DNA from: Mytilus californianus | Lineage: Eukaryota | Direction: 5' to 3' | NCBI RefSeq assembly: GCF_021869535.1 | Contig: NW_026262723.1 | Location: 1,612,001 to 1,676,000 of the forward strand | Length of the DNA stretch: 64,000 nucleotides | Shown here: piece by piece, positions 29,884 to 61,224 of the stretch | How the letters are laid out: each line of letters opens with the position of its first letter | Position numbering within the stretch: position 1 is the first letter of the stretch | Program-made: the position numbers and the translations under genes | Notes under the pieces: model-generated | What the model was told of the DNA's origin: nothing | The model's database searches: none | Seen by the model: the letters and a program-made list of their open reading frames with translations, nothing else

Positions 29884-30683
29884 GTTTACAAAAAAACAGG
29901 CGCGGGAAATACACCCAGTTACATTTCCAGATGCTGGAAGCGGGAATATTAAAAAAAAAAAAAAATTTGTTTAGACAAAAATATTATGGGGACTGGTCTG
30001 TCGAACAAGAAATTTAATTGGTGTGGCCTAACTATATGATTTAAGATGAATAAAAGTAATTAAAGTAAACAGATGTAAACAGATGTAAATCACTGCAAAG
30101 TAATAAAGACATTTTGAAAATTCACATCATCAACATAAGATAAAAATATAATTATCAAAGAGCAATAACCGCAATTTGCCCATTTAGTCGATATGGATTA
30201 CCTCCCATTGTCAAATATTCGAAATAATTCATATAGCGGGGATTCGGGAGAATTTTAGGCGTTTCGTAGAAAATCTGACAGTTGTTCCTAACGCCCTGAT
30301 ATAAACGCCACTCAGAAATAACTTTTTTCTCCGAAGAATTTCCCAAAAATAGTCAAGGGGTCCAAAAAACGAACGAAAAAATTAATTGAAAATCAAAATT
30401 TCTTCTTATATTATGGATTTCCATAATTTTATGAATTACGAAATCTCATAATATAGCAACAAAATTATTCGAATAACTAATATTATTGAATTTCATAATA
30501 ATGTGTTTAATTAGGATATTTCATAATATTATGCAATTTCCTATTTGCCTCGACTGAACAATTTAGAAGCTTTTGTACATTTGTTTTAGGATTAAGTTTT
30601 TCGCCTCTTATGCAAGAATATTAGGAAAATTGATTTGACTTTAATTTTGTATGAAGTAGTACCAATAAATTTTTTTTTTTCAG

Positions 30684-30995
30684 AAGTTCAAGCATGTGAG
30701 AATATATCTTGTTTCATGTGGAGAAAAACAGGCATACAGATATCTATGTCGTGTTATATTAAAAATGTGTATTCATCTATACTTATACTTGATCCCTATA
30801 ACACGACGCAAGCAAATTGTTCAGCATTTAACAACACATTTGTCTGTGATGCACTGCCGGAAATTGGCGCATACTTCAATTCTTTAAAAAATGAAACAGT
30901 TTTACAATGGGATATATCACATGAATTGACAACTGGCAAATGGTTGTGCATTCATGGTGTAGATATAATCGAATTGTACATAAACCCAACAAAAG
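30684..30995 (+). CDS. Gene A exon: atypical Ig-like domain D1 (6 Cys, GxWxCxHG)
   Basis: Acceptor (t)11-cAG, 312-nt open phase 1-1 exon, donor G|GTAAG. The peptide aligns with gene B exon 55118-55438. Confidence 0.9.
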
Positions 30996-31454
30996 GTAAG
31001 ATTAAGGAACATGCGGCGTTGTGTTTTGTAAATAATTGTATAATTACTCAAAAGTTTATATATAAATAATATTCGTACAGTTAAGGAAAATATTACATGT
31101 ATTTGTTCGAGCTTTTCTCCTATATCGAAGCGAGTACAAAGAAAATTTATATTTTCATACATTGAACATATATTGTTTTTACTCTGTAATTTGAAGAAAT
31201 CGAGATGACTTAAGCGCGGACCGCAATGAGGACTCCAAATTAAACTGTGAGTAACTATTCCTCGCAACAGAAGCACGATACCAGGAGACTATAAACGTAT
31301 ACTATTACGTTATTCGATTTGTGTTATCAATACAAATGTATTTGTATATTAGAAAGGTTGTTTTACGGATAACAGATTTTATTTTTTCACCTGTTAATTT
31401 TGTAAGCAGTTCACTGTAATTTAAAATAATGCAGCTTGCTTTCAGTAAGTAAAC

Positions 31455-31650
31455 AAACTCATCAGAGATACCTGAATTACAATTTTGTACGATAATCGCG
31501 CGTTTCGTCTACAAAAGACTCATTTGTGACGCTTGAATCAAAAACATTTAAAAGGCCAAATAAAGTTTGCCGCTGAAGAGCATTAAGGGCCCAAAATTCT
31601 GAGAGGTTTTGCTAAGGTAATCTATTCCTGGGGTAGACATTTCTTAGAAT
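31455..31650 (-). ncRNA. Retrozyme/PLE-associated repeat with a decayed minimal type-I hammerhead ribozyme (family 1)
   Basis: Minus strand reads gcgtca CAAATGA gtcttttgtagac GAAAC gcgc GAT: core and cleavage triplet are both mutated relative to CUGAUGA and GUC. Confidence 0.7.
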
Positions 31651-32264
31651 ATGTAAACAGGTAATTTATATTAAGTATTGTAGTAAGTGATATCAACAAG
31701 TATTAGAGTATCCAATAATCCGTCAATTGATTGGACAAACATGTATTAAATCTTAATCGGGTACTGCCGAAATTGAATTTAAGCGTGCTACTTCCAGTAT
31801 AATGTTCAAAATCTATGATTAGGTCATTCATCAAGATTTGGGCGATTTCAACATTCGTTTAAAAAAAGGGTAGAGTACAGTGACCCTGAAATGTTTTTGT
31901 TTGATTTATTGACTGTTTGGTTTTTTGCAGTGTGCTTAAAAAGTAAAAATAACAAAAATACCGACCTCTAAAGAAAATTCAAAACGGAAAGTCCCTTATC
32001 AAATGACAAAATCAAAAGCTCAAACACATCAAACGAATGGAAAACAACTGCCATATTCCTGACCTGGTACAGGCATTTCCTTATGTAGAAAATGGTGGAA
32101 TAAACCTGGATTATAGCTATCTAAACCTCTCACTTGTATGACAGTCAAATGAATATAGCCAACGTATACTTTTATTTATACTAACTGTGCCAAAACAAAA
32201 TTTGCCTTGTGTTTTTATTTTTTAGACATATTTTATTAAAAAAAGCAAAATTTTGACCTTTCAG

Positions 32265-32621
32265 GCTCACACTTATCTATCAAAATAGGCATGAAAACAG
32301 AAATACAGATAAAAAACGACACGTATTTATTTACTTTCGAATGTAGTTCTTGCCTTACACCTTACGGCAATTCTGTTGAGTTCATATTAAATAACAATAT
32401 TCTGGATGTACTTCGAGAGAACAACAGGAAATGTTATCATAAATCGGGGGAATGCAATTACAAAACTTGTGTATGCTGTAAAGATTCTAATAGATATGTT
32501 TTGAAATATGAACTGCCGACAAAGACACAGATAAGTTCGTCTGGGTGTAGGATGAGATTTAACGATGAAAACCAGCAAGGCCTCGTGGTAAAAGAAGTAC
32601 TTTTACAATTCAACGATCTTG
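32265..32621 (+). CDS. Gene A exon: Ig-like domain D2 with a C-x6-C-x4-C-x-C insertion
   Basis: Acceptor ctttcAG, 357-nt open phase 1-1 exon, donor G|GTAAGT. Homologous to gene B exon 52314-52658 (C.S, V.F..NN, Cys cluster, LKY, C.M.F). Confidence 0.92.
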
Positions 32622-32687
32622 GTAAGTAATTTTTCACGTTAAATGTTTCTGTAAAAAGAACTTTTCGTAAGACAACATTAACTATCT

Positions 32688-32690
<3 letters not shown>

Positions 32691-32734
<44 letters not shown>
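32691..32734 (+). repeat. (CT)22 microsatellite
   Basis: Read directly from the sequence. Confidence 0.95.
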
Positions 32735-32738
<4 letters not shown>

Positions 32739-32938
32739 ATCTATCCACCTATCTTTCTATCTTTCTTAATTTTAATATAGCAACATTATGATTTTTCAAC
32801 ACTTTCTATTCATAAATATAATTGTTGTTATTTGAATTAATTGATTTTGTTAAATATGATCTGTTCGTCTTTTATGTTCATTGGCGTTTACTCGACATTT
32901 TATATTCGTTTACATGCATTACGTAATATTTTAATTAG

Positions 32939-33085
32939 AAAGACACAATTTATCGCTGTTAATCTCCCGTGGAAATGGAACTTACATAGGATTTAAAGAG
33001 TCAGAGATCATATCAACAATAAAAAAATCAACAAAAGAGACAACAGAAAAAATTGAAACTGCACCACCAAACAAGAGTTTTTCAA
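32939..33085 (+). CDS. Gene A exon: Ser/Thr/Glu/Lys-rich stalk (ERHNLSLL...KESEIISTIKKSTKETTEKIETAPPNKSFS)
   Basis: Acceptor ttttaattAG, open phase 1-1 frame, donor A|GTAAGT. An alternative in-frame acceptor exists at 32989/32990. Confidence 0.8.
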
Positions 33086-33629
33086 GTAAGTAATTATTTA
33101 GTTCAAATTTCTATACACATACGTTGAATCTAGAACTCTAAATGTAAGATAAGTATTGGGAATTATTTCAACAGTTAAGTTAGAAATACGATTTACCAGT
33201 CAGTTATGTTTAAAACTTCATGAACGTTTGCAAAAACCAATTATCGAAAAACCTAAACGGCATAATTATTTTGGCGTCCAGTTTATACCTATAATACCTA
33301 AAGAAGGAATTGGACGATTTTTCAGGAAAAGACGTTTGTCCATCTGAACAAAATATAGTTAAAATTGTACAGGTTATAACTGCATTTTTCAGTTTCTGCT
33401 AGCAGGCTTAAAATTTCTTTGCGTTTATTATCGAATGCATTTCGTATGCAAAATTCTCCCAACAGTAGAAAAATTATGAAATTATATATATTTCTTGGCG
33501 AAGACTTATCTAATTGCGTATACCATTCCAGTAAATAAGTAAGTTCTTATTACTATACCTATTGGTTTCAGCAATAACTTGCAATGAATCTGATTACAAG
33601 AAATAAATAATACTGGTATCTATGATGAA

Positions 33630-33707
33630 TGAACTCATCATAGATACCAGAATTAAACTTTTGTACTCCAGACGCGCGTTTCGTCTACAAAAGACCCACC
33701 AGTGACG
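33630..33707 (-). ncRNA. Family-1 minimal hammerhead repeat copy with core mutated to CUGGUGG
   Basis: Minus strand reads cgtca CTGGTGG gtcttttgtagac GAAAC gcgc GTC tgga. Confidence 0.7.
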
Positions 33708-34388
33708 AGTTTATTGATATATTTGAATTCTACCATCCAAATACACAGTCATGTGACTTAGCAGAAGCTTTGTCGTTGCAACAAAAATATCGTTCTCTTC
33801 ATAATTCGTTTTGCTGAGTTTGGTCGGTTCAGATTAATTGGTATCAATATACTTAATGGTTCTGGCAGGGTGGTCGCTTAAAATATGTCATCACATGTAG
33901 ATAGTGTAATATTATAAAATATGTGAACGACATTGAGGAGCTCGTTCATGCTTAATTTTGAAAACAAGTTACATTCTCATTCTGGTTTTGCAGGATCATA
34001 AATGAAAACAATGATGTGTTAAAGACGAAAGGGTAGTTTGCATATAACATAATAAACAAATATTATCCTAATACCCACGGAAATGTATACACCAAAAGAA
34101 TAATCAACCATTTTGACTTCATCGATAAAGAAATGTTTTTGCTTGTTTGTTAGATGACATTTGAAACAGTCCATTAGCATTATTCGATTCATTGACATTT
34201 GACCTTTATTACAAATATCTGGTATATCGCTGTGTATATCCATTTACATACTATAAACTCTAAACTGACAGATTACGCAAGCATTAATTGTAGTATATCT
34301 TAATACATCCACACCAACTTCTGTGTGCAGGATGTATTGTCCTATAGTGTCATTCATACGGTTTAATTTGCATTTTGAAATATTGTAG

Positions 34389-34457
34389 ATTTGTATTTTG
34401 ATTTTGAAAGATCACACATTAGTCCGAAAGGCCATAAGGAATTAAGCTATACTCATG
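34389..34457 (+). CDS. Gene A candidate second stalk exon (NLYFDFERSHISPKGHKELSYTH)
   Basis: Acceptor tattgtAG, 69-nt open phase 1-1 frame, strong donor G|GTAAGT. Confidence 0.55.
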
Positions 34458-35109
34458 GTAAGTGATGGATCATTAGGATTAAGTCTACTGCAAATCACCA
34501 ATAATTTAAATAAAATACGAGAAAGTTCAGATACAAAATATACTGCTTACACATAATGGTCACATAATGTATATCAACGACAGAACATTACAAATAGAAG
34601 TAACATTCACATATGATTTTAATCCCTTTCTATTCGATTTAAGGACATAGATGGTACAAAGAGTTTGAAATCATCACCAATCAATCTAAGTTATTTAATT
34701 TGATTGAATTGCAAACGTATATGGTCATCAAGGTGGATGCGAGAATTAATTTTATAAATTTTACTGTGAATTAAGCTCTGACAAACTAAACAATGCCTAT
34801 AATTGCATAAATGAATTATTTCAATATCATGACCAGTTACATAATTTTTCAAACCACAATATTTTAACAAAAAACAACTAAAACAAACAAACAAGCTTTT
34901 TAGCTTAACATACGGCAATGATTTTTGTTTATTGTCGAAGACGTACGACGATCTATAATTACTTTTATACACATCCTTTGGTCTCTGTTCGACATGTTCG
35001 TGTATCGGAAATCATACCACATCTTTCAATTTTATATCAACAGAAATTTCGAACATTTACAAAGGAATATTTTAACAATTTTATGTGCTGTATAATAACA
35101 CGTATTTTA

Positions 35110-35388
35110 AAGTTCGTTAATTTCGCATTCAGGTATATTCAATTTGATGATATCCTTTCGCTCAATGACAACTTTCAGAGAGTGCTGTATTCTCATGTTT
35201 CGAATATCATATGTCATGATGAACCTACCTTACAAATACCACTGACAATAGAAAGACTGATTCATATTTGTATCTTTTTACTGAAACAAAAAAGTCTTTT
35301 TCGTTCGATAGATGATCAACATGACAGTTTCTTCATTGTTTAATTTCCTGTTATCAGTAATGAAATACCCTCAGTGCCATTGTATGGC
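35110..35388 (+). pseudogene. Older, heavily decayed Penelope-like RT fragment
   Basis: Reads across frameshifts as NFAFRYI(QF)DDILSLND, LTNTTDNRKTDSYLYLF and DQHDSFFIV*FPVISNEIPSVPLYG, paralleling FRYIDDVLSLNN...DTTD...SYLDL...DKRDDFNFPIVNFP...NIP..PAYG. Confidence 0.7.
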
Positions 35389-36400
35389 CTTCAAAAATAT
35401 TGTGATGAAGTATATTCAACCAGTGGTGTCAATCAAATGTGGATTGTCAAAAATTCTAAAGATCTACTGCTAAATCTTAGATCACAATCTCTGTAATTTT
35501 TCATCAACATTAAGACCTTGATTTTTCTACGCTTTACACTACTATTCCCCATGCTCAATTGAAAGATCGACTTCACCATCTCATTCAACAGAGTTTTTTC
35601 TGTAAAAATGGGAATCGTAGATATAAATTTCTTGTTTTGGGTTATACTAATTCTTATTTTGTGAAGAACCACACTGATTCTATCAGAAAATACACTGAAG
35701 ATGATATTATCAAAATGCTGGACTTTTTAATCGACAATATATTTGTTGAGTTTGGAGGATTGATATTTCAACAGACAGTCGGTAATCCAATGGGTATTAA
35801 TTGTGCACCCCTTCTGGCCGATTTGTTTTGTACTCGTGTGAAGCAGAATTCATTCCGAACCTTCTAAAAGACAAAAAGAAAAAGCACCTTGCGAAATTCT
35901 TTAACTTTACTTTCAGATATATTGATGGTGTCCAAACTGAATAACCCATTTTTCAGTCAGTACTTGCATCTCATATATCCCAGTTAACTCGAAATTGAGG
36001 ATACTACCGACACTAGAAGGACTGCTCCACACCTTGCTCTTTTCCTCAATATTGACACAGATGGACGACTTCACACTAAAATCTATGACAAACGGGATGA
36101 TTTCAACTTCCCAATTATCAATTTCCAATTTCTCAGCAGTAACATACCCTCTGCTACGTCGTTTGGTGTTTACATATCTCAATTGATACGTTATGCTCGT
36201 GCATGTTCACACTATACGGATTTCATATACAGGAGTGTGCTCCTTACGCAGGAACTGCTCCAACAGAGTTATGAGGAGGAAAGATTAAAAATGACACTCC
36301 GTAAATTTTATGGACACCATCACGAATTGTTTGATCTATAAGATGTGTCTGTGTCTAAACTAACTAACGACATTTTCACAATTAATGTTAGATTGTGGTT
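35386..36400 (+). pseudogene. 5'-truncated Penelope-like (Naiad/Chlamys-type) reverse transcriptase relic
   Basis: Contains GLQKYC...SGVNQMWIVKNSKDLL, IKTLDFSTLYTTIPH, FQQTVGNPMGINCAPLLADLF, FRYIDG (catalytic YIDD changed to YIDG at 35918-35929), IYDKRDDFNFPIINF, GVYISQLIRYARACS and KFYGHH, with several stops and frameshifts. Confidence 0.92.
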
Positions 36401-37600
36401 TACCATCTACGCCATCTGTCTGCTAAGTACCGAACGTGACCTATTCCCGAATATGACTGTTTTGCCGAGTGTGAATTCGCATTGCTATACGACGTGTCTC
36501 GGTATTTATACATCCAACATTCATGTATTTAGTTATGATGTTTCTTTTGTAATAACGGTTCGATATTGTGTTATGTCTTATCGTTTGTGGTTTGATTCAT
36601 TCTGTATTTTCGGTACATTTCACATATGTCTTATTTTTCAGTATAGTCGAGTTAATTTCCATTTTCCATGGATAAAGTATTGTGTTAGTTCGAATAATTA
36701 TGACGTCGTCACAGCATTAATTTAAAATAGTCTTTCAAGACCGTCATAATCATGATAATTATTTGGACTAGTATTGTGAAAATATTTGTGAATTTTTGGA
36801 TCTCGTTCCATATAATTGTATGAATGTCAAGATTATATATACGTCACAAAAATACGTCACTTGTTGTGGCGTTGATCCATTCATGTGACGTGCAGTTTGT
36901 GGTGTCCTGTGCTGTCGTTAATGGGAGATGTCCGTTGTTTTTCTGCGGTTTACATGTTGTAATGTACTATTATATTATTTATTTATGCATTTCTCTGTGC
37001 TGAGTGTTCTTGTGTTTGTTTGTATTGTATTCCTGTCACGTAGTGTTGTCATTTTAGCGATATGTTTTAACATTCTCATATAAGCGGGAGGTTTGGCTAG
37101 CCAGAAAAACAGGTTCAACCCACCATTTTTTCTTAAAATGTCCTGTACCAAATCAGGAATATGGCAGTTGTTTCTATGTATGTTGGCGTTTGTTTTTGTT
37201 GCAGTTCAGTGTTTCTGTTGTTCCGTTGCTTTTCTCTGATAGTTGATGTGCTTCCCTCGGTTTTAGTTTGTAACCCGGATTTGTTTTCTCTTAATCGATT
37301 TATGACTTTTAAACAGCGGTATACTACTGTTGCCTTTATTTACCTATCTCAATTTATACATTATATGAACATCATTAGCAGGAATGGACTTATAACGCAA
37401 ATCATGCTCCAAATGTTATTAATAAGGACGAGTGAAAGCGATATTATAAATATTTTACTATTACCATCATGAACTGATTTTCATATAATATAGTCTCATG
37501 AATAAACATTTCACACAGTTTAATATAATTTTTCAAAGTAATAATGCTAAAGTATTTCTTCTCCTGCAATATTTATTCATTTTTTTTTCTTTTTCTTTAG

Positions 37601-37686
37601 ATTTTAGAGATATATTTACCAGACTAGCAGTTGGGTTTGCAATTGTAATATTCATCGTGGCATTGGCATGTTGTTGTGTAACATAG
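37601..37686 (+). CDS. Gene A exon: hydrophobic TM/GPI-signal-like segment FRDIFTRLAVGFAIVIFIVALACCCVT* ending at TAG
   Basis: Long polypyrimidine acceptor, phase-1 entry, ~20 hydrophobic residues, CCC, and TAG at 37684-37686. The joined CDS is a multiple of 3 (966 nt, or 1035 nt with the 34389 exon). Confidence 0.88.
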
Positions 37687-37966
37687 GAATGCAAGTACGG
37701 TATATTATATTTTAAAACTGCCACATCGTTGTATAGCTTTGCCTGGTGAATTTTAATGATTTCGACATCTTGTAAATTTGCTTTAATTGTGAATAAAAAC
37801 TTACAAGGAGCTCATAATTTCCTAACAACATAATTGACGGCAATTTTGTTAGTGTAACGAATATAGTAAATGATATTTATACGCCTTTTGTTCTAATAAT
37901 TAGGTAGACTCTTCTAATAGGGCTTGGCCAGTACGTCATCTCAGAACTATTTTTTTCATATTTCAG

Positions 37967-42707: not shown

Positions 42708-43033
42708 TCAAACCCAAATATTTGAAAGTCAAGAATGTATAAGAACCAAAACAGTTGAAGAGCTATATGACCAAAAAGGACCTAAACAGGTTTTTTGTAT
42801 TTTCAATAAATATGAGGTCTCCCAAAAAAATTATCAAAATTCAATACCATTTTTTTGTGGCAACTACATGCTTCAAAATTATTTATGTCAAAATAATCCT
42901 AAAAAATGGATAAAGGAATGCCAATTTAAAAAGGAACATTAATTGAACAGAAACAGAATAAAGGAGACAAACAATCAGCAGAGATTATCAAGTTCTCAAA
43001 TCGATATCATTTTCTTAAGTGACGACTAATTTT

Positions 43034-43039
43034 TTTATT
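43034..43039 (-). terminator. Candidate polyadenylation signal of gene B
   Basis: AATAAA on the minus strand ~49 nt after the TAA at 43088; AT-rich context makes a chance match possible. Confidence 0.4.
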
Positions 43040-43087
43040 CCTTTTCACCGAAATTGGTATATTGCAGGAAAAGTAAAAATGATAAAA

Positions 43088-43268
43088 TTATTCTAATTCA
43101 AGATAATGATCAACATCTTCTGAGTACTCTTCTATTTCATCCTCCTTAACACTTGTCTCGGTTCTGCTTGAAACTTCTGGTTCTAAGTAATATTCCTCAA
43201 TTTCTTCGTAGGTAGAAGTCTCGTTGTAAATATTTACATTGTTGATCTGTCCAGGTGCAGCAAGATAT
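43088..43268 (-). CDS. Gene B terminal exon: acidic, Tyr-rich cytoplasmic tail with an ITIM-consensus motif
   Basis: Acceptor catcacAG, phase-2 entry, YLAAPGQINNVNIYNETSTYEEIEEYYLEPEVSSRTETSVKEDEIEEYSEDVDHYLELE*: 7 Tyr and 18 Asp/Glu in 59 aa. Confidence 0.88.
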
Positions 43269-43547
43269 CTGTGATGTATGATTTTATTAGTTTAATACGT
43301 GTTATATTGGAATTACTAACCGTAAAATTTAACAGTTTTACAGATAATATGTTTTTAGAAAAAAATCTATTTGTATTATGTTGACACCGGCAACATATTT
43401 GCATTATATGGGCATGATGGTTATTAGAATTTGTCTGATATTTTTAATTATGCTATGTGAAAGCGTTTCAGATGACGTTTGTAAGTAACATATTTTGTAA
43501 AAAAAAAGTATTCTATTCAGAAATAAACAGAAATAAACACAAAATAC

Positions 43548-43575
43548 TTTCTTCGTCCGTTGTTATTAGTTGTTT
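43548..43575 (-). CDS. Gene B candidate 28-nt cytoplasmic micro-exon (xTTNNNGRRK)
   Basis: AG/GT bounded, phase 1 to 2; it can bridge the TM exon to the terminal exon in frame. Confidence 0.45.
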
Positions 43576-44238
43576 CTAATATTTCATTAATGAATATGAA
43601 AATTGAAACTACAAAAATGTATTCATACATGTTCTTTTCTGTAAGGATAATACACAAAATGCTAAGTCTTGAACTTGTTGCAGGTGTTAAAACATTCAAT
43701 ATAGTACAATTCGATCAATTATGAACTGAAATTAAAGTGTCTATTTCCTGAATTCAAAGTTTTCAAATTCATTCCTATCTGAAGGACCAGTCCTCAAATC
43801 TTCTCTTAAACGTACACCACACCTATTGCAATTACAACATTTATACTTTATGCTGGATAAACGTTGACGTCTTCATTTTCAACCTTCTCACTACATCTGG
43901 TAATATTTACCGTTCACGAATAATCATAATGACCATATGTTATATTTGATGTCTTGAATAACGACAATATCACTCTTCTACAAAAATTTTCACTCAAAGA
44001 GTTGATATACTGATAAGCTAAAAATATAAGTTTGAACCTGGACTGTTACTGTTACTGCATTGTGTCCAAGCTTATTTAACATAATGAACAGAATGCAAAA
44101 AGAGAGCACACCGATACGTTTTCCTAATAGGTAATGTATTTGAGGTAGTTAATATAAATCTTTAAACTTAGCAGATCAATCAACAATTATTCGTCATCAA
44201 TCTTCTTTCTTCTAAATAAGGAAAGAAAGCTGTCTTAC

Positions 44239-44261
44239 ATCATCGACAGATATATCTAATC
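44239..44261 (-). CDS. Gene B candidate 23-nt cytoplasmic micro-exon (GLDISVDD)
   Basis: Acceptor gtgtttgcAG, donor GTAAGA, phase 1 to 0. Confidence 0.55.
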
Positions 44262-46196
44262 CTGCAAACACATTCCATTTCAGTAGTGTTTTGTTTGTAA
44301 ATGACATTACATTAGGTGTCCTTACAAAAATCGTTGAAATGCTTAATTAACATATTGCACTTTTTCCAAATCTACTAATATCCAGTCCATCACAAATCAG
44401 TCGATTAAAAAACTGACAACGCCATGGCAAAACACAAACGAAGCACAACTGGAAGACAGTGTACAAAACTTAACATAGAAAACTTAAGACTGAGCAACAC
44501 GAACCCGACAAAAAAACCTGCGACGATCTCAGATGCTCCGGAAGGGTAAGTAAATTCTGCTCCACATTATATTATGGATCGAATGCGGTATACACCATTC
44601 ATTTATGTCGTGTACACAATCTGACTGAAATGCATTGCTATAGGACAAGAGTTTAGTTACATGTCATAAAAAGATTGAATTCGGGTGTATCTGATGAAGG
44701 TAAACTTAATTCGATTTTGGCGCGAATTTTAGTTTGGCATACTTTTGTTATCCCAAGACAGCATGTAAATATTGCTTATTTGTCATTAAGAAGGAAGGGT
44801 CAGAAGATTCCTGCTCCACAAGTGAAACCTGGAGTATATTTCTCAATACGATATTTCTGTGCTTGTTCTCCACTTCATGAATCATTCCTCGTAGATTGTT
44901 GCTGGGGAAAACTACGTAAAACAGAGGTAAAGTCATATTCGATGGTTTTATTCAATATTTTCACAATAACAATAAACAATACAACCGCATCGTTTTCCTT
45001 TGTTCGTTATGGAATTTTTAAAATGACAGCAGAAATTCTTCTAAAAAATATTTAAAATTACCATTTAAACAAAGTGTTTCCGATGTAATTAACATCCTAG
45101 TTACAAAAGGTTAACATGAGTTTAAAGATATAATGACCAGTACAAATGACTCTTCCTTAACCCTGCCACCGAAGAGATAAACGTTGAAACAAAACCAAAA
45201 TTATAAGTAACAATAATTGGTACAGATAGCCTTGAACATGTGTTTACTAGCTCTACATGTGGTGGGTTTAACAATTGCAATTACATGTGCACAATCCGGG
45301 ATGAAGGTCGGGAAATTTGGACTGCCACTATCAAATGAGGGTGTTTTGGACATGGACAGATATTTTACATTGCAGCAGGTAGACAACGGACCCTCAAAGC
45401 GTTGTAAGAGTTCTTAACCTACAGAGAGCATGGCACTCTCTCTACAAGAGGCATCGCATTTAACGTTCGATTCTGCAGACGTCGCTGCATACGTATACAT
45501 CCCGCAGAGTCACACGGATGTCCCACTTTGGCATGGGTTTTACTGCCGTTTGTAAAAAGGTCAAAAGTGACATCTTTTTTTATTCCGCAGTCACTATTGA
45601 AGGTATTTTCTTAATCATTTCTTAATTATACAACGGGGAATTTTTTTAAATACAATGTATATCAAAAATAATGCCAGTACCAAAGCACCGACTATTGAAC
45701 TGACGTCTGTGATGATACCATCAGACTAACAGTTTACCAGCAGTTGAATCAACACACAGTTCATCAACTAACAGAATGTTCACTTAGTATTTGTCTGCAA
45801 TGTTTGTTTGCAAAAAAAACAAACATGCACACGGTCAAAGAAATACAATAACGGTGTGTCGACTATCCATATCAACCTTAAAAATAACTCATTATCTTAT
45901 CTGACACAAAGATAATCTTTCAAATTACTCACATTGCTCTTGAGGCAGCAAGTAGTCTCTGTGTATCTATAAGAATGATGAGTATCATTATTGGTGATGA
46001 CGTTTTAAACAAACAACAAATTTGAAGATTTCTTTTTATTTTTATTTTGCATAAACATATTTTCTGAGTTCTGTGATTCTGAATAATCTATATTTAAAAT
46101 GTTGACATTCACTGTGATCATAACAGTCTTAGATGTATGTTTTATTCCGCGAGAAATATTTCTATTAATATATAATTGTGGTCTCATTTTGGATTA

Positions 46197-46620
46197 ATTG
46201 ATTGTTGGTTGCTAAACGTCCAGTGGCAACTATTTCATACATGTTCTGGACGAGAACAAATTAATCATAAATACAATAGGTAGGTCCGGAAATAAAATCC
46301 GTCCGTGACAAAGGTTGGGGAAATTTTTACTGCCACTGGAAAATGAGGGTATAGTTGATAAAGACAGAAATTTTGTCTTGCAATAGGCCACCTACGAACT
46401 TCTCAAAGAGTTGTTGCAAGGGTTCTTAACCTGTAAAAAGCGTGGCTCTCTCCTTACACAAGGTATCGGATTCAATGTCCCCATTCTGACCAGAAGTGGC
46501 TGCGGACTTGTACATCCCACGCAGCCAACAGACACCCAACTTCGGAAGGTGTTTTATCATCGACCGGAAGAAGACCAAAGTGACCATATTTCAATTCCCC
46601 AGGCCAGTCACTATTGAAGG
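46197..46620. mobile_element. Dispersed SINE-like repeat (ttgattgttggttgc...aacgtccagtggcaa family)
   Basis: Diverged copies at ~7705-8030 and 45290-45602 and end fragments at ~9172-9225, 25843 and 57435-57480. The (TTGA/TTGG)n end resembles a SINE tail on the opposite strand; classification is inference. Confidence 0.6.
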
Positions 46621-46903
46621 TCTCATTTTGGAAGAAAGGTATAAGAAAGATGGCCTTATTCAATTAGAAAATACAATTCTAAATTTTGATTTTGTATACT
46701 TCAGTTTTATGAATTTAACAAAGCCATAACACACTTAATCAATTGCAGTATACATCACTGACAAAATCATTGCAAACGAAAGAATACTGCAATCTTGTAT
46801 GATTCCAAGATGAAAGTATTCCCTTTTGAATAGATAAATCTTGATGTTTTTGGCCTCTATATTGGTTTGATAGGTTTAAGCTTTTACTTGTTATTAAACA
46901 TAC

Positions 46904-47011
46904 CTCGTCTTTGCCGGCAAATTAAGGCAATTGATAAAATAACTGAGACAACAAACAGCAAAGTTGCAAGTAATATCCAGCTTAACAGTCTAATGTTAAA
47001 AACATTAGAAC
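46904..47011 (-). CDS. Gene B transmembrane exon (GSNVFNIRLLSWILLATLLFVVSVILSIALICRQRR)
   Basis: Acceptor ttttttccAG, phase 1-1, 23-aa hydrophobic run followed by a RQRR stop-transfer, donor G|GTATGT. Confidence 0.92.
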
Positions 47012-48346
47012 CTGGAAAAAATGAATATCATGATCATTTTTTTTTAAAAGTTAATAAAAAGTTATATGTGTTTCTTTTAAACTAACTTAAATAAATACAA
47101 TGTATCGATATTTTTATGTTTGGTATCAAATTACCAGGAGGAAATTAACCTGCAACTTAATGAAATATATCTTTAGAGTGTATGAGAATGTAACTCGACT
47201 GCTACCAGTTTTACACATTCATACCATAACTGATGATCTTTTCATGACTATAGATTACAAGAAATAAGTACAGTTTAAGTAAAAATCTACCTTTTTAATT
47301 TTTTTGATTTTGTTGTGTAATTTTGAAAGGCGTTAAAAGATAAATTTAATAGAATGTTCAATTTGTCGTCGCCGAAATTCCGTTATCTTTTCCTCATCAA
47401 ATGCGACCACCAAAGAAATTTTACTTGCAATTAGTAACACGGCTGGTGCCACTAGTGAAGCACAAACTTCTTACCCTTACTTGAAGTACTCTATTTATAT
47501 TAAATAGTTTCGTGTTCTTATTGCTTTTGTAGTCAGTGTTATATTTGGTGCCTTTTTAATTTCATTACGTATATTCACTAAGAGACTTTCCGTTATTGTG
47601 TGTAGCCTTGATATGACTAATCAATGTTTTTTCTATGAGTAACATGGCTTATTTAAAGTTTCTCTTTTTGTCCATGGTGTTGATTGTTTTATTCGACAAG
47701 TTTTTTGGGATGCCTTATGGTATTTTCTGTCTTTTTGCTTTACCATTTAATAATTTAAAACACAGAAAAGACAACATTTGTGTAAGCTGCATATATGTAT
47801 TATTGGAGATTATTTGGAATAAGTACTATAGCAGGTCAGATTTTCCCCAATATTTCATACAGAATCATTGAATGTAGTAATACAGAGACTAGTTTTGGAA
47901 CTTTTTGAACTCATTTCTATACATGCTTACTCTGGGAATATTACACACTAGTACATAAAATACTACAAATACAAAAACTATCGTTTTATATTTTGTGTCA
48001 ACTTGGTGCCTTTTATGTTGTCTCATTGTACATGTATGAGTTTTCTTCTTGAATGAAGTCAGTATAAGTGCCTATAGCTATTTATAACTTTTTTTGGACT
48101 TTGGTGGGTAGTTGTCTTTTTGTAAACCATTTTCTATAATGTATATCTCGTAACTATGCATAAAATAAATACTGCTTAATGTGTTTATGATACTTCATAC
48201 TTTGAATCCAGGCAATATACGACAATTTAAGGAAAACAATTTATTTGAATGTATTTCTTCGCAAGTAGATATGTATGTTCGTTACAAGGAATGTGGTGTC
48301 TTATTTGTGACAGAGTGTTAATTTTTTAGAGAAAGTAAAGTAATAC

Positions 48347-48667
48347 CATTGTCATGATTGTTGAATTCAAATTCTATTTTCGTCGTTCCGTAATCATTAT
48401 CAAGCAAAATATAGCACTTAAATATGCCGTAGTCTTTGTTGATCACAGTGAGATTTGCGATGTACCCGTTGTGGGTTAAAATTTTCCCAAACATTCTTAT
48501 CACTAAAATATCCGTCGACATATTTTGGAAAAATCGTGTTGAGTTTGGAAGCAGCATATTTTTATAAAACCACTTCGGGTTGTACGGATTTTGCATTGAT
48601 AGAAACTTGGCAGATAATGTGATAGTTGTGCCCATTGTAATAATTTTGTCAATTACCACTGGTGGAC
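48347..48667 (-). CDS. Gene B exon: membrane-proximal Ig domain D5 (W and DYGxxxC present, B-strand Cys absent)
   Basis: Acceptor tttttcatctAG, 321-nt phase 1-1 exon, donor G|GTATTA. Confidence 0.9.
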
Positions 48668-49505
48668 CTAGATGAAAAACAAAATGATAAAACTTCCATT
48701 TCATTAAATACTTTTGATTTTATATATTTAATTACCAGAAACAAAATTATATACGCTGATTCGTTCACGCAAATTTAACGCGTTGTGGGTAAACTTGATC
48801 CATGCATCATTGGACTGATGAGATCATTGTTTCCACTTCACATTTTGAAAGCTTCTGTCTATATTCGTATGTTCATTTTTCAACACTATGTTCAGATTTA
48901 ATATATTGAATTTTTCATTATCCCATTTATCTAAGCTGCGATGCGAATAATATATCAATTAAGATATTCAGCTCTTTTTTAACGTACTGATACGGATTTT
49001 CTTTTCTGAACAAACGCAATTAAAACGGCAAGATGTTTTTAAATGTAAACATGCAGCAAAAAAAAATGTTATGAATTGCAAGAAAACGCCAAGATAAACA
49101 TAAAGAACATATTAATAAAAGAACCACTAAATTTAAATTGTCAAAGTACATTTTAAAGCTTACAAATCGTTTTGTTGTTGTTGTTATTGTTGTTGACAAC
49201 ACTGGCGCATTACTACATCAAGAAGTGCATGCAAATAGAATTATTGAATTTTTATATATTGAGTTAAATTAACATTCGGAGTTTTGTCCCAACAGCCATT
49301 TAACTAATTGATGCGAAAACGAATTGTTGAAAATGCTAACTCATTATCAAATGTACATAAAGATTATCAATTGTTGTACCTTAAATAGTGAGTTGAATCA
49401 TCATTCAGAGCTTTTGTACTTCAAGCCATGTTACAAAGTATTAAGAAGATTAATTGATGATTTCTTAACGTAGTTAATAATAAGACAAATAGATAAAATT
49501 ACTAC

Positions 49506-49796
49506 CTGTAACAATTACACTGGTAGTCTTATTTTGACGGAATATTTTTTGAGGATCTTGGTTCCATGCTACACATATGTATTCACCATTGTCCTCATAA
49601 TTACAAGAATCGATTGACAAAAATGAAACATTTCCTGTAATATTTCCTGCCACAGATCTTATATATGTACCATGAAATCTGTGCTCCCATGGAGAAAATC
49701 CAAATTCTGACATTTCGCCACTGACTTCGCATGATATAATGACTGAATCAGTGTTGTTGCAGATCACCTTATCATTCATATTAAGAATGGGAGCTC
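49506..49796 (-). CDS. Gene B exon: canonical I/C2-type Ig domain D4
   Basis: VIISCEV...PWEH...LSIDSCNYEDNGEYICVA carries the C-W-DxGxYxC signature; acceptor attccAG, donor G|GTAGT, phase 1-1. Confidence 0.95.
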
Positions 49797-51658: not shown

Positions 51659-51931
51659 TTATTACATGTAATTTGATTGACAATGACCTTGTAATAACGC
51701 CTGACGCTTTACATGAACACGTTGTTCCATTGTCGAATGACGTCACCATTTTGGAAACTTTAGCGACGTATGTATTATGTTCACGCTTATTTGTTTGAAC
51801 AACTGTTTCAAGGCATTGCATGTAAATTTGGAGTAGGTAATCCCTGGAAATTGTTTTGCACATAATTTCAACAACACTGCCAGCAGATAATGGAAATTCT
51901 TTATCAAATGAAATGAAAGGACCATTTATAT
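51659..51931 (-). CDS. Gene B exon: C2-like Ig domain D3
   Basis: INGPFISFDKEFPLSAGSVVEIMCKT...FDNGTTCSCKA...IKLHVI; acceptor ttcttcttgcAG, donor A|GTAAGT, phase 1-1. Confidence 0.9.
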
Positions 51932-52313: not shown

Positions 52314-52658
52314 TAACTACTGATACGAAAAGACAATCAGATAATGAGCCAAACATCTTGAAATCCATAGAACATCTAAATGCTAAGTCCCCGCTATCTA
52401 ATTCGGCAAAATACTTCAACGTGAAACTTCTACCTTCCGCAAAACACTGGCACATATCACTTTGACAAACTGATGCCTCCAAGCTTGAGAAACAACCGCT
52501 TGCATTTGTACTTATTTTTGTATAAAACTGATTGTTAACATGAAAATAAACCGCTGAAACTGTCGATGCTGTATTTGAGGTACACAACAGTGATATCTGT
52601 TGTTGCCTTTGGACATATTTTGGTCGACTTAACGTTATTTTCGGGGATACTTCATAAC
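52314..52658 (-). CDS. Gene B exon: Ig-like domain D2 with a C-x8-C-x4-C-x-C insertion
   Basis: Acceptor tttttttcAG, open frame, donor A|GTGCGT (phase 1); homologous to 32265-32621. Confidence 0.9.
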
Positions 52659-55117: not shown

Positions 55118-55438
55118 CTAATTCCTTTGACACTTTAACCTCGACACTGACGTCATCGAATCCATGAACACACCTCCATAAACCATTTAATGGATGATCA
55201 TTGTGAGGTCTTTTAACGACATATGCTGTTTCACCAGATGACAAGTCTTGTGTTATGTTGTTCGTATTTGAAAAACACATTGAATTTGGGTATGGCAGCA
55301 AGCAGTGCGCTATTTCATCACCGGACGGATTATATATTGTGACGCTAGATACTATTTTATCTGCTTTGCACGCTATTCTAAGCTGATCACTGTTTACACT
55401 CCAGCTGATGCATATACTTCCGTAGATGTCGATAATAT
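55118..55438 (-). CDS. Gene B exon: atypical Ig-like domain D1 (GxWxCxHG)
   Basis: Acceptor ttttaaaacAG, 321-nt phase 1-1 exon, donor G|GTATAG; homologous to 30684-30995. Confidence 0.92.
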
Positions 55439-61184: not shown

Positions 61185-61224
61185 ATTTAAGCAGAAAATA
61201 CGTATATATTAGATAACCATCCAT
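61185..61224 (-). CDS. Gene B signal-peptide exon (MDGYLIYTYFLLK+T)
   Basis: Acceptor AG at 61233-61232, caaaATGG start context, donor T|GTAAGT. The phase-1 join to D1 gives MDGYLIYTYFLLKYIIDIYG-SIC. Confidence 0.75.

What the first reader, a model, noticed from the sequence alone, without database searches (positions are those of the whole stretch)
43088..43268. Acidic seven-tyrosine tail with overlapping ITIM and Src-SH2 motifs
Seen: S-T-Y-E-E-I (43199-43216), EIEEY twice, YLEP and a terminal YLELE; no ITAM spacing. Established: (S/I/V/L)xYxx(I/V/L) recruits SHP/SHIP phosphatases, pYEEI is the optimal Src-family SH2 ligand, and acidic residues before Tyr favour Src/Syk phosphorylation. Inference: an inhibitory or dual-mode immunoreceptor tail. 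This exon is below the ORF-track length threshold.
Basis: partly seen in the sequence, partly recalled or inferred. Interest (0 to 1): 0.75.

Follow-up and report, generated by a model that had tools for sequence, protein, structure and literature searches.

The report
Tyrosine-rich tail of mussel Ig receptor
This stretch is the last coding piece of an intact mussel surface-receptor gene; its acidic tail carries tyrosine docking motifs conserved across Mytilus mussels, so it is a real but uncharacterised member of a receptor type already known in bivalves.

Summary
On the minus strand, 43268-43091 (stop 43090-43088) encodes 59 acidic residues with seven tyrosines, including S-T-Y-E-E-I, EIEEY twice, YLEP and a terminal YLELE.

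It is a real exon. It is 79-83% identical to copies on other mussel contigs, against 58-67% in the gap-ridden flanks. The acceptor AG and the stop position are kept, and dN/dS is 0.36-0.77.

It is the last of nine GT-AG exons of an intact 637-aa type I Ig-superfamily receptor (61224 to 43088, minus strand). It joins the transmembrane exon through a conserved 34-nt microexon (45966-45933), not directly. Annotated homologues from five Mytilus species show the same chain.

Across three tail types of the family (at least two of them paralogues in one species), five tyrosines are invariant: YxAA, NIY, T-S-x-Y-E-E-I, Y-x-E and the C-terminal YLELE. The sixth and seventh are not.

The likeliest role is a phosphotyrosine/SH2 docking tail. 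Whether it inhibits or activates cannot be read from sequence. No RNA evidence was obtained in this species.

No relative of the tail was found outside Mytilus-type sequences. ITIM- and ITAM-bearing Ig receptors are already characterised in oysters, and this scan has noted other ITIM-type Ig receptor tails elsewhere in this genome. It is a new member of a known kind, of moderate interest.

The parts
43091..43268 (-). Terminal coding exon: 178 nt, phase-2 acceptor. It supplies the third base of the split Ile codon plus 59 codons, YLAAPGQ...HYLELE. This is the finding itself.
   Evidence: Translation. Conservation against L001-L004. tblastn of P0005 residues 306-364 maps here at 71% identity.
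43088..43090 (-). Stop codon TAA, at the same position in all homologues.
43269..43270 (-). Acceptor AG of the last intron, invariant in all five aligned loci.
43199..43216 (-). S-T-Y-E-E-I, tail residues 18-23 (Tyr598 of the model). It matches the ITIM consensus and the Src-type SH2 motif YEEI. T-S-x-Y-E-E-I is invariant in the family.
43091..43105 (-). C-terminal Y-L-E-L-E (Tyr633), a YxxL motif preceded by an acidic stretch. It is invariant except in one oddly annotated model, P0012.
45933..45966 (-). 34-nt microexon (tcttatag|ATACAC...GCAAT|gtgagt). It is phase 1 in and phase 2 out, and encodes (D)TQRLLAASRA(I), linking the TM exon to the tail exon.
   Evidence: Found by similarity to NSQVLTASRAI of P0005. 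A 103-nt match at 76% identity to the M. trossulus locus, E 9e-16. Splice sites are conserved.
46904..47011 (-). Transmembrane exon: 108 nt, phase 1-1. It encodes GSNVFNIRLLSWILLATLLFVVSVILSIALICRQRR. There is no charged residue in the membrane span, and CRQRR serves as stop-transfer.
   Evidence: P0005 residues 259-294, 64% identity.
48347..48667 (-). Ectodomain exon D5. Ig-like by size and by the D-x-G-x-F-x-C motif. No Pfam hit.
49506..49796 (-). Ectodomain exon D4, a bona fide Ig domain (Ig_3 / I-set).
   Evidence: Pfam Ig_3 at 1.2e-5 here. Above the gathering score in homologues P0006 and P0009. Titin, VEGFR2 and JAM hits with the family profile.
51659..51931 (-). Ectodomain exon D3 (Ig-like, inferred).
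52314..52658 (-). Ectodomain exon D2 (Ig-like, inferred; Cys-rich).
   Evidence: 84% identity to M. trossulus.
55118..55438 (-). Ectodomain exon D1 (Ig-like, inferred).
61185..61224 (-). Exon 1: ATG plus most of the signal peptide (MDGYLIYTYFLLK), with donor T|gtaagt.
   Evidence: Homology to exon 1 of the M. trossulus model, 82% nt identity. The full model is checked.

Best explanation
The stretch is the last coding exon of an intact nine-exon gene on the minus strand (61224 to 43088, 637 aa). The gene encodes a type I membrane receptor with these parts:
- a signal peptide;
- five roughly 100-residue ectodomain modules, of which one is a certified Ig domain and the others are Ig-like by inference;
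- an uncharged transmembrane helix;
- a 76-residue, very acidic (net -16 over the last 59 aa) and probably disordered cytoplasmic tail.

The tail is assembled from three exons: the end of the TM exon (CRQRR), a 34-nt microexon (DTQRLLAASRAI) and this exon.

Shown here: the exon is under purifying selection, the gene is intact, and the tail is attached to Ig-TM receptors in five annotated Mytilus species. Five tyrosine-centred short motifs are invariant while the residues between them drift: Y-x-A-A, N-x-N-I-Y, T-S-x-Y-E-E-I, Y-x-E and Y-L-E-L-E-COOH.

Inferred mechanism: when the receptor is engaged or clustered, acid-preferring tyrosine kinases of the Src or Syk type phosphorylate these tyrosines. 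pY-E-E-I and the C-terminal pY-L-E-L lie 33-42 residues apart. That spacing would suit a tandem-SH2 effector such as the SHP-2/Corkscrew phosphatase, whose known sites include pY-L-D-L types. pYEEI alone is also an ideal ligand for the SH2 domain of a Src-family kinase.

The tail therefore most likely works as a phosphotyrosine docking platform. The sign of the output, inhibitory or activating, is not determined by the sequence.

My confidences: about 0.9 that it is a real cytoplasmic tail exon of this receptor, about 0.55 that it is a phosphotyrosine/SH2 docking tail, and about 0.25 that it is specifically inhibitory.
For: - Translation and motifs.
- Only 4 proteins in 1.84 billion representatives match the tail. 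Three are mussel genomic ORFs with the same frame and stop; the fourth is a spurious repeat-protein hit.
- Exon identity is 79-83% against 58-67% in the flanks. Indels are in frame only. dN/dS is 0.36-0.77.
- P0005 (XP_063447253.1, M. trossulus) contains D3-D4-D5-TM-NSQVLTASRAI-tail and maps colinearly on the window.
- The microexon has canonical sites and matching phases, and is conserved in M. trossulus.
- Homologues annotated in M. californianus, M. edulis, M. galloprovincialis and M. coruscus all carry TM-microexon-tail.
- Five of 7 Tyr are invariant, against 15 of 52 other residues (one-sided Fisher p = 0.04). The invariant residues cluster around the tyrosines.
- The full model has one stop and all GT-AG introns.
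- Over the whole gene against M. trossulus, dS is 0.36, ectodomain dN/dS is 0.31 and tail dN/dS is 0.57.
- Bivalve precedent: oyster CgNCAM1 uses cytoplasmic ITIMs and interacts with CgSHIP2 (PMC11841013). Oyster CgIgIT2 has five Ig domains, a TM and an ITAM (PMC11999971).
Against: - There is no transcript evidence in this species. An RNA-seq run from the same study, with about 6% of its reads sampled, put no read on any exon of the gene. The splice chain therefore rests on homologous gene models and conserved splice sites.
- The comparison with the closest copy (L001, 95.5% nt identity) shows 6 nonsynonymous and 1 synonymous change, so there is no constraint signal at that short distance.
- Motif matches are short and degenerate. 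Y-E-E-I and Y-L-E-L also fit the YxxPhi sorting signal, and the Ser/Thr residues next to acidic residues fit casein-kinase-2 sites.
- No SH2 binding, phosphorylation or tissue data exist for this family.
- The AlphaFold model of a homologue was too poor to add anything (mean pLDDT 39.6).
Confidence: 0.55

Rival explanations
1. The receptor is purely inhibitory: phosphorylated S-T-Y-E-E-I acts as an ITIM, recruits a SHP-type or SHIP-type phosphatase and damps haemocyte activation.
For: - S-x-Y-x-x-I fits the ITIM consensus, and Ser at -2 and Ile at +3 are invariant.
- The TM helix is uncharged.
- Oyster CgNCAM1 shows that ITIM-SHIP signalling exists in bivalves.
- Other ITIM-type Ig receptor tails were noted elsewhere in this genome (AI notes, unverified).
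Against: - Glu-Glu at +1/+2 is not typical of SHP-1/2 sites. From established SH2 specificity work, it is the optimum for Src-family SH2 domains and good for Syk.
- There is only one consensus ITIM. The second YxxL has Asp, Gly, Arg or Ser at -2.
- The consensus is loose enough to occur by chance in a tail with seven Tyr.
Confidence: 0.22
2. The receptor is activating. pYEEI recruits and opens a Src-family kinase. The C-terminal acidic-cluster-plus-YLEL acts like a hemITAM and recruits Syk when the receptor dimerises.
For: - YEEI is the textbook optimal Src SH2 ligand.
- E-D-V-D-H-Y-L-E-L resembles the hemITAM pattern of an acidic triad followed by YxxL, and is conserved as [DE][DE]..V..YLEL.
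- Oyster CgIgIT2 is a five-Ig receptor that signals positively through tyrosine motifs.
Against: - There is no canonical ITAM, since the spacing is 35 residues.
- The acidic cluster sits one or two residues further from the Tyr than in known hemITAMs.
- Nothing has been tested.
Confidence: 0.18
3. The tail is a trafficking signal and not a signalling one. The YxxPhi motifs (YEEI, YLEL) bind clathrin adaptors. The acidic clusters with Ser/Thr are casein-kinase-2 / PACS-type sorting signals for endocytosis or recycling of an adhesion or scavenger receptor.
For: - There are two YxxPhi motifs and four S/T-x-x-D/E sites in a 31% acidic tail.
- The tail has a conserved extreme C-terminal position.
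Against: - Five separate tyrosines are invariant, three of them not in YxxPhi context.
- The Ser/Thr positions other than T-S before Tyr598 are not conserved.
Confidence: 0.12
4. The open frame is a chance ORF or a dead exon of a gene that is no longer used.
For: - No RNA reads in the sampled run.
- Neutral-looking divergence against the closest copy.
- The polypyrimidine tract at the acceptor is weak.
Against: - Frame, acceptor and stop are conserved at dS of about 0.36, and the flanks are much more diverged.
- All nine exons are open, with canonical splice sites.
- The same tail is in annotated proteins of five species.
Confidence: 0.03

Closest known systems
Oyster CgNCAM1 (Crassostrea gigas; PMC11841013)
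   Same: A bivalve type I Ig-superfamily receptor with a TM segment and a cytoplasmic tail carrying ITIM-type tyrosine motifs. It is reported to interact with the SH2-containing phosphatase CgSHIP2 in haemocytes.
   Different: Its ectodomain is different (three Ig domains plus one FN3, NCAM-like) and it has two ITIMs. No sequence similarity to this tail was detected, since no oyster protein appeared in the tail searches. The function of the Mytilus family is untested.
Oyster CgIgIT2 (reviewed in PMC11999971)
   Same: Five extracellular Ig domains, a TM segment and a tyrosine-motif tail in a bivalve haemolymph receptor.
   Different: It is described as carrying a classic ITAM. The tail here has no ITAM spacing. 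Homology was not tested directly, and CgIgIT2 did not appear among the hits.
Vertebrate ITIM receptors (PECAM-1, SIRP-alpha, LILRB, KIR) and SHP-2 docking proteins (Gab1, IRS-1)
   Same: An Ig ectodomain, an uncharged TM segment, and two YxxL/I/V motifs 20-40 residues apart that together bind tandem SH2 domains. C-terminal YLEL resembles the YLDL/YIDL SHP-2 sites. These comparisons are from my own knowledge.
   Different: There is no detectable homology. The +1/+2 residues here are Glu-Glu. The second motif lacks the hydrophobic -2 residue. The tail is far more acidic.
pYEEI ligands of Src-family SH2 domains (for example hamster polyomavirus middle T; peptide-library optimum)
   Same: An exact Y-E-E-I core, conserved in nearly all family members.
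   Different: Those ligands are defined biochemically. Here there is only sequence, and the context (Ser at -2) also fits an ITIM.
Hydractinia Alr family (PMC9546547)
   Same: A lineage-restricted invertebrate cluster of divergent Ig-like receptors, most of whose domains escape sequence profiles, with ITIM- or ITAM-like tails.
   Different: It is a cnidarian family and is unrelated in sequence. It has an allorecognition role, for which there is no evidence here.

Membership tests
Ig-superfamily type I receptor | At least one recognisable Ig domain in the ectodomain. | tested here: met
   D4 exon: Pfam Ig_3 at 1.2e-5 and I-set at 3e-4. Homologues P0006 and P0009 score above the gathering score. 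The family profile hits titin, VEGFR2 and JAM Ig domains. D1, D2, D3 and D5 are Ig-like only by size and Cys/DxGxYxC pattern. The AF2 model was too poor to confirm this.
Ig-superfamily type I receptor | A signal peptide, a single TM helix and a cytoplasmic tail in one reading frame. | tested here: met
   Nine-exon model, 637 aa, one stop. The TM exon is described. Exon 1 was placed by homology. The splice chain is supported by homologous annotated models, not by RNA from this species.
ITIM-bearing inhibitory receptor | Cytoplasmic (S/I/V/L)-x-Y-x-x-(I/V/L). | tested here: met
   S-T-Y-E-E-I at 43216-43199. S-x-Y-E-[ED]-I is present in all 13 aligned tails.
ITIM-bearing inhibitory receptor | No charged residue in the TM helix, so no pairing with an ITAM adaptor. 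| tested here: met
   LLSWILLATLLFVVSVILSIALIC.
ITIM-bearing inhibitory receptor | A second ITIM or ITSM about 20-30 residues away, typical of high-affinity SHP-1/2 recruitment. | tested here: not met
   The only other YxxL/I is D-H-Y-L-E-L, with Asp, Gly, Arg or Ser at -2. There is no TxYxx(V/I).
ITIM-bearing inhibitory receptor | Phosphorylation-dependent binding of a SHP-1/2 or SHIP SH2 domain, with an inhibitory output. | not testable with these tools
   This needs phosphopeptide binding and cell assays.
Src-family SH2 ligand (pYEEI class) | pTyr followed by two acidic or hydrophilic residues and Ile at +3. | tested here: met
   Y-E-E-I. It is invariant apart from Y-E-D-I in P0002. Binding is not testable here.
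ITAM | YxxL/I, then 6-12 residues, then YxxL/I. | tested here: not met
   YEEI and YLEL are 35 residues apart in the window and 33-42 in the family.
hemITAM | A single YxxL immediately preceded by a tri-acidic stretch (DEDG-YxxL type). | tested here: inconclusive
   E-D-V-D-H-Y-L-E-L here, and [DE][DE]..V.[HQ]YLEL in the family. The acidic residues are present but offset.
Tyrosine-based sorting signal with acidic cluster | YxxPhi plus a CK2-type S/T-x-x-D/E acidic cluster. | tested here: met
   Sequence pattern only: two YxxPhi motifs and four S/T-x-x-D/E sites. The Ser/Thr sites are mostly not conserved. Function is not testable here.

The most novel reading that the evidence does not exclude
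This Mytilus-restricted family could be a self-contained, dual-mode signalling receptor. The invariant pYEEI would capture a Src-family kinase through its SH2 domain. That kinase would then phosphorylate the other four invariant tyrosines in turn, and pYEEI together with the C-terminal pYLEL would clamp the tandem SH2 domains of SHP-2 or Syk. The subfamily in which the YLxP tyrosine is replaced by Asp would be a constitutively 'charged' variant. Because the genes sit in a fast-evolving convergent or tandem cluster, the family could serve self/non-self or pathogen discrimination in mussels, which are hosts of transmissible cancers.
Probability: 0.1. Interest if true: 0.6.

Novelty: new member of a known kind. 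Interest (0 to 1): 0.35.

Why it matters
Mussels rely on innate immunity and carry many lineage-specific Ig-type receptors whose signalling is almost unknown. This work turns an isolated short ORF into a complete, testable gene model. The model covers nine exons, including a 34-nt microexon that gene finders miss easily.

It also identifies a small Mytilus-restricted receptor family and pinpoints five invariant tyrosines. Two of these, Tyr598 in TS-x-YEEI and Tyr633 in YLELE-COOH, are the obvious targets for Tyr-to-Phe mutagenesis and SH2 pull-downs.

It does not open a new kind of biology. Tyrosine-motif Ig receptors are already characterised in oysters and have been noted repeatedly in this genome.

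Tried and rejected
1. Direct TM-to-tail splice. An alternative donor at 46888 (CAA|gtaaaa) would join the TM exon to the tail in frame, giving ...GMFNNK-YLAAP. I rejected it because every homologous gene model uses the GAG|gtatgt donor at 46904 and the microexon.

2. A second TM-like ORF at 45706-45615, with a phase-1 acceptor and an in-frame stop, as an alternative short-tail exon. It is not conserved in the M. trossulus locus, so I treat it as chance or lineage-specific.

3. RNA evidence. Raw RNA reads of a run from the same study, plus three contig sets, covered only intronic repeats and no exon. A second run search with the exon and its downstream sequence found four RNA-seq runs holding 20% of the sampled words. 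The result is inconclusive.

4. Selection test on the closest copy, L001. Exon divergence is 3.9% against 4.5% in the flanks, with 6 nonsynonymous and 1 synonymous change. This is uninformative at that distance.

5. Pfam on the tail, the TM exon and four of the five ectodomain exons gave nothing meaningful. The SCIMP, TNFR16_TM and ComGE hits are sub-threshold TM noise.

6. The AlphaFold2 model of homologue P0011, built on a 21-row alignment, had a mean pLDDT of 39.6. Only part of D1 and the TM helix were confident, so no fold search was run.

7. A tail copy in the neighbouring paralogue (gene A, plus strand) was not found in the window or in M. trossulus.

8. ITAM and ITSM patterns are absent.

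9. Species identity. No annotated Mytilus protein is more than 79% identical to any exon-level match, so I could not name the species. Earlier scan notes call this genome California mussel.

Full report
**1. What is in the sequence**

The feature lies on the minus strand. Reading window:43088-43270:- gives RYLAAPGQINNVNIYNETSTYEEIEEYYLEPEVSSRTETSVKEDEIEEYSEDVDHYLELE followed by TAA. The other two minus-strand frames and the one plus-strand frame I translated are full of stops.

An AG lies at 43270-43269, so the exon starts at 43268 with the third base of a split codon, which makes this a phase-2 acceptor.

- S-T-Y-E-E-I at 43216-43199;
- EIEEY twice;
- YLEP;
- a terminal YLELE;
- seven tyrosines;
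- no ITAM spacing.

The 59 residues contain 15 Glu and 3 Asp, for a net charge of -16.

**2. Is it more than chance?**

Length alone says nothing. This window is about 32% G+C and has 202 stop-free stretches of at least 59 codons. However, this is the only one that reaches 18 acidic residues in a 59-residue window, and it also has at least seven Tyr.

The decisive evidence is comparative.
- A word search found one homologue, P0001.
- An exhaustive phmmer search of 1.84 billion representatives found only four proteins. Three are ORF-level gene calls on mussel genomic contigs. The fourth is a spurious repeat-protein hit.
- In a DNA alignment of the window with those contigs (L001-L004), the exon is 79-83% identical to the two distant copies. 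The flanking intron and the downstream sequence are 58-67% identical and riddled with gaps.
- The exon has no gap, or one whole-codon gap.
- The acceptor AG and the stop codon are in the same place in all copies.
- dN/dS is 0.36-0.77.

The closest copy, L001, is 93.5% identical counting gaps, or 95.5% over aligned bases. It is too similar to be informative: exon divergence is 3.9% against 4.5% in the flanks, with six nonsynonymous changes and one synonymous.

**3. What gene it belongs to**

The 90%-identity cluster of P0002 also holds a full-length annotated protein, P0005. This is XP_063447253.1, 'uncharacterized protein LOC134726769' of Mytilus trossulus, 364 aa. Its sequence runs Ig-like domain, Ig domain, Ig-like domain, transmembrane segment, 'NSQVLTASRAI', then the tail.

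tblastn places these parts colinearly on the minus strand of the window at 51821-51663, 49794-49504, 48668-48348, 47012-46905 and 43267-43091.

The 11 residues between the TM segment and the tail come from a microexon. In the window I found it at 45966-45933, as tcttatag|ATACAC...GCAAT|gtgagt. It is 34 nt long and encodes (D)TQRLLAASRA(I). It accepts the phase-1 donor of the TM exon (GAG|gtatgt at 46904) and hands phase 2 to the tail exon. The microexon and its splice sites are conserved in the M. trossulus locus: 103 nt at 76% identity, E 9e-16.

Exon 1, with the ATG and signal peptide, was placed at 61224-61185 by homology to the M. trossulus model.

The complete model has nine coding exons, all with GT-AG introns, and all ectodomain introns are in phase 1. 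It encodes 637 codons with a single terminal stop.

The M. trossulus locus (L005) is colinear. It even has the same convergent paralogue downstream, so it is probably the orthologous locus. Against it, dS is about 0.36, dN/dS is 0.31 for the ectodomain and dN/dS is 0.57 for the tail. The gene is therefore intact and constrained.

The genome is a mussel's. All homologues are from Mytilus, and earlier scan notes call it California mussel. No annotated protein is more than 79% identical to any exon-level match, so I cannot name the species or find this gene annotated anywhere.

**4. The family and the conservation of the motifs**

Searching with P0005 and with the tail of P0007 recovered annotated proteins from five species:
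- M. trossulus: P0005;
- M. californianus: P0006 and P0013;
- M. edulis: P0007, P0010, P0011, P0012 and P0014;
- M. galloprovincialis: P0008;
- M. coruscus: P0009.

No hit came from any other genus. The word search misses distant relatives and the representative library missed known members, so absence elsewhere is not proven.

All models that reach the C-terminus join TM, microexon (...SRAI) and tail.

The tails fall into three types, beginning YLAAP/YFAAP, YFAAAGQ and YFAAPCETG. P0011 and P0012 are both M. edulis proteins on a contig of the same stated length, so at least those two types are paralogues within one species.

Among seven non-redundant tails that are 44-89% identical, the invariant residues are Y-x-A-A, N..I-Y, T-S-x-Y-E-E-I, P, Y, and V..Y-L-E-L-E. 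Five of the window's seven tyrosines are invariant, against 15 of 52 other residues. The one-sided Fisher p is 0.04, and the sequences are not independent.

Two tyrosines are not conserved. The first Y of 'YY' is unique to this window. The second, in YLEP, is Asp in the YFAAAGQ subfamily.

This pattern of short invariant islands around tyrosines in an otherwise drifting, acidic, low-complexity tail is what short linear docking motifs look like.

**5. How it most likely works**

Shown here: a real tail exon on an Ig-TM receptor, an uncharged TM helix, and invariant tyrosine motifs.

Inferred from established SH2 and kinase specificity:
- Acid-flanked tyrosines are good substrates of Src-type and Syk-type kinases.
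- pY-E-E-I is the optimal Src-family SH2 ligand and also a good Syk SH2 ligand.
- With Ser at -2 and Ile at +3, the same site fits the broad ITIM consensus.
- The C-terminal pY-L-E-L resembles the pY-L-D-L and pY-I-D-L sites that SHP-2 uses on Gab1 and IRS-1.
- Its distance of 33-42 residues from YEEI suits tandem SH2 binding.

I therefore read the tail as a phosphotyrosine docking platform (about 0.55). The sign of the signal stays open: inhibitory about 0.22, activating about 0.18.

A sorting-signal reading (YxxPhi plus acidic clusters) remains possible, at about 0.12. A dead or chance exon is very unlikely, at about 0.03.

Bivalves do use such modules. Oyster CgNCAM1 has two ITIMs and interacts with CgSHIP2 (PMC11841013). 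Oyster CgIgIT2 has five Ig domains, a TM segment and an ITAM (PMC11999971).

**6. Weak points**

- There is no transcript evidence in this species. The RNA run from the same study, with about 6% of reads sampled, covered only intronic repeats at 44472-44567 and 46193-46430.
- Four RNA-seq runs labelled 'mollusc metagenome' hold a fifth of the sampled words of 42850-43268.
- The splice chain rests on gene models annotated by others, and I could not check their RNA support.
- Only D4 is a certified Ig domain.
- The structure model was too poor to classify the other four modules or to say anything about the tail.

**7. Comparison, novelty and score**

The receptor works like the ITIM- and ITAM-type Ig receptors of vertebrates and oysters, but it shows no sequence homology to them.

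As a motif class, it meets the ITIM pattern and the uncharged-TM criterion. It fails the 'second ITIM/ITSM' criterion, and the biochemical criteria cannot be tested here.

This scan has already noted other ITIM-type Ig receptor tails in this genome. Those are AI notes that I did not verify, and they concern other DNA.

I class the finding as a new member of a known kind. It is a small, Mytilus-restricted and so far uncharacterised family. It now has a complete gene model and clear candidate residues for experiments. Interest is 0.35.

Noticed in passing
window 30596-37701 (+ strand): A convergent paralogue ('gene A'). It has a D1-like exon at 30671-30994 (tblastn E 5e-5 against D1 of this gene), a D2-like exon at 32240-32626 and a TM-like exon ending ...ACCCVT then TAG at about 37683. 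The M. trossulus counterpart reads on past that point (CFCVPYRNPG...). No copy of the Tyr-rich tail was found downstream, either here or in M. trossulus.
   Followed up: partly
window 35514-36338 (+ strand): Reverse-transcriptase-like open frames (…YTTIPHAQLKDRL…NPMGINCAPLLADLF…) sit inside gene A's intron. This is probably a retroelement insertion.
   Followed up: no
window 45615-45706 (- strand): A second TM-like ORF (VSSIVGALVLALFLIYIVFKKIPRCIIKK*) lies in the intron between the microexon and the tail exon. It has a phase-1 acceptor and would give a tyrosine-free short tail if it were used. It is not conserved in the M. trossulus locus.
   Followed up: partly
window 44472-44567 and 46193-46430: High-copy repeats in the introns. 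They are the only parts of 42900-48800 with RNA reads or deep contig coverage. Those reads are 95-99% identical and run on into unrelated sequence, so they come from other copies.
   Followed up: no
P0014 (M. edulis), P0012 (M. edulis), P0011 (M. edulis): There are oddities in the annotation of family members. P0014 fuses a DZIP3-like HEPN domain to a partial D5, a degenerate TM segment and the tail. P0012 leaves the tail frame after ...EGQY and runs on for more than 100 residues. P0011 skips the D4 Ig exon. These are probably model errors or isoforms.
   Followed up: no
tail residue 27 (window 43187-43189) across the family: The YLxP tyrosine alternates with Asp between subfamilies (DYLVP / GYIVP against GDLVP). 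This swaps a phosphorylatable residue for a permanently acidic one.
   Followed up: partly
L001 vs window 43091-43268: Against the closest copy (about 95.5% nt identity), the tail has six amino-acid changes and one silent change. One of the changes is the loss or gain of a tyrosine (Y26/D). The numbers are too small to call positive selection.
   Followed up: partly
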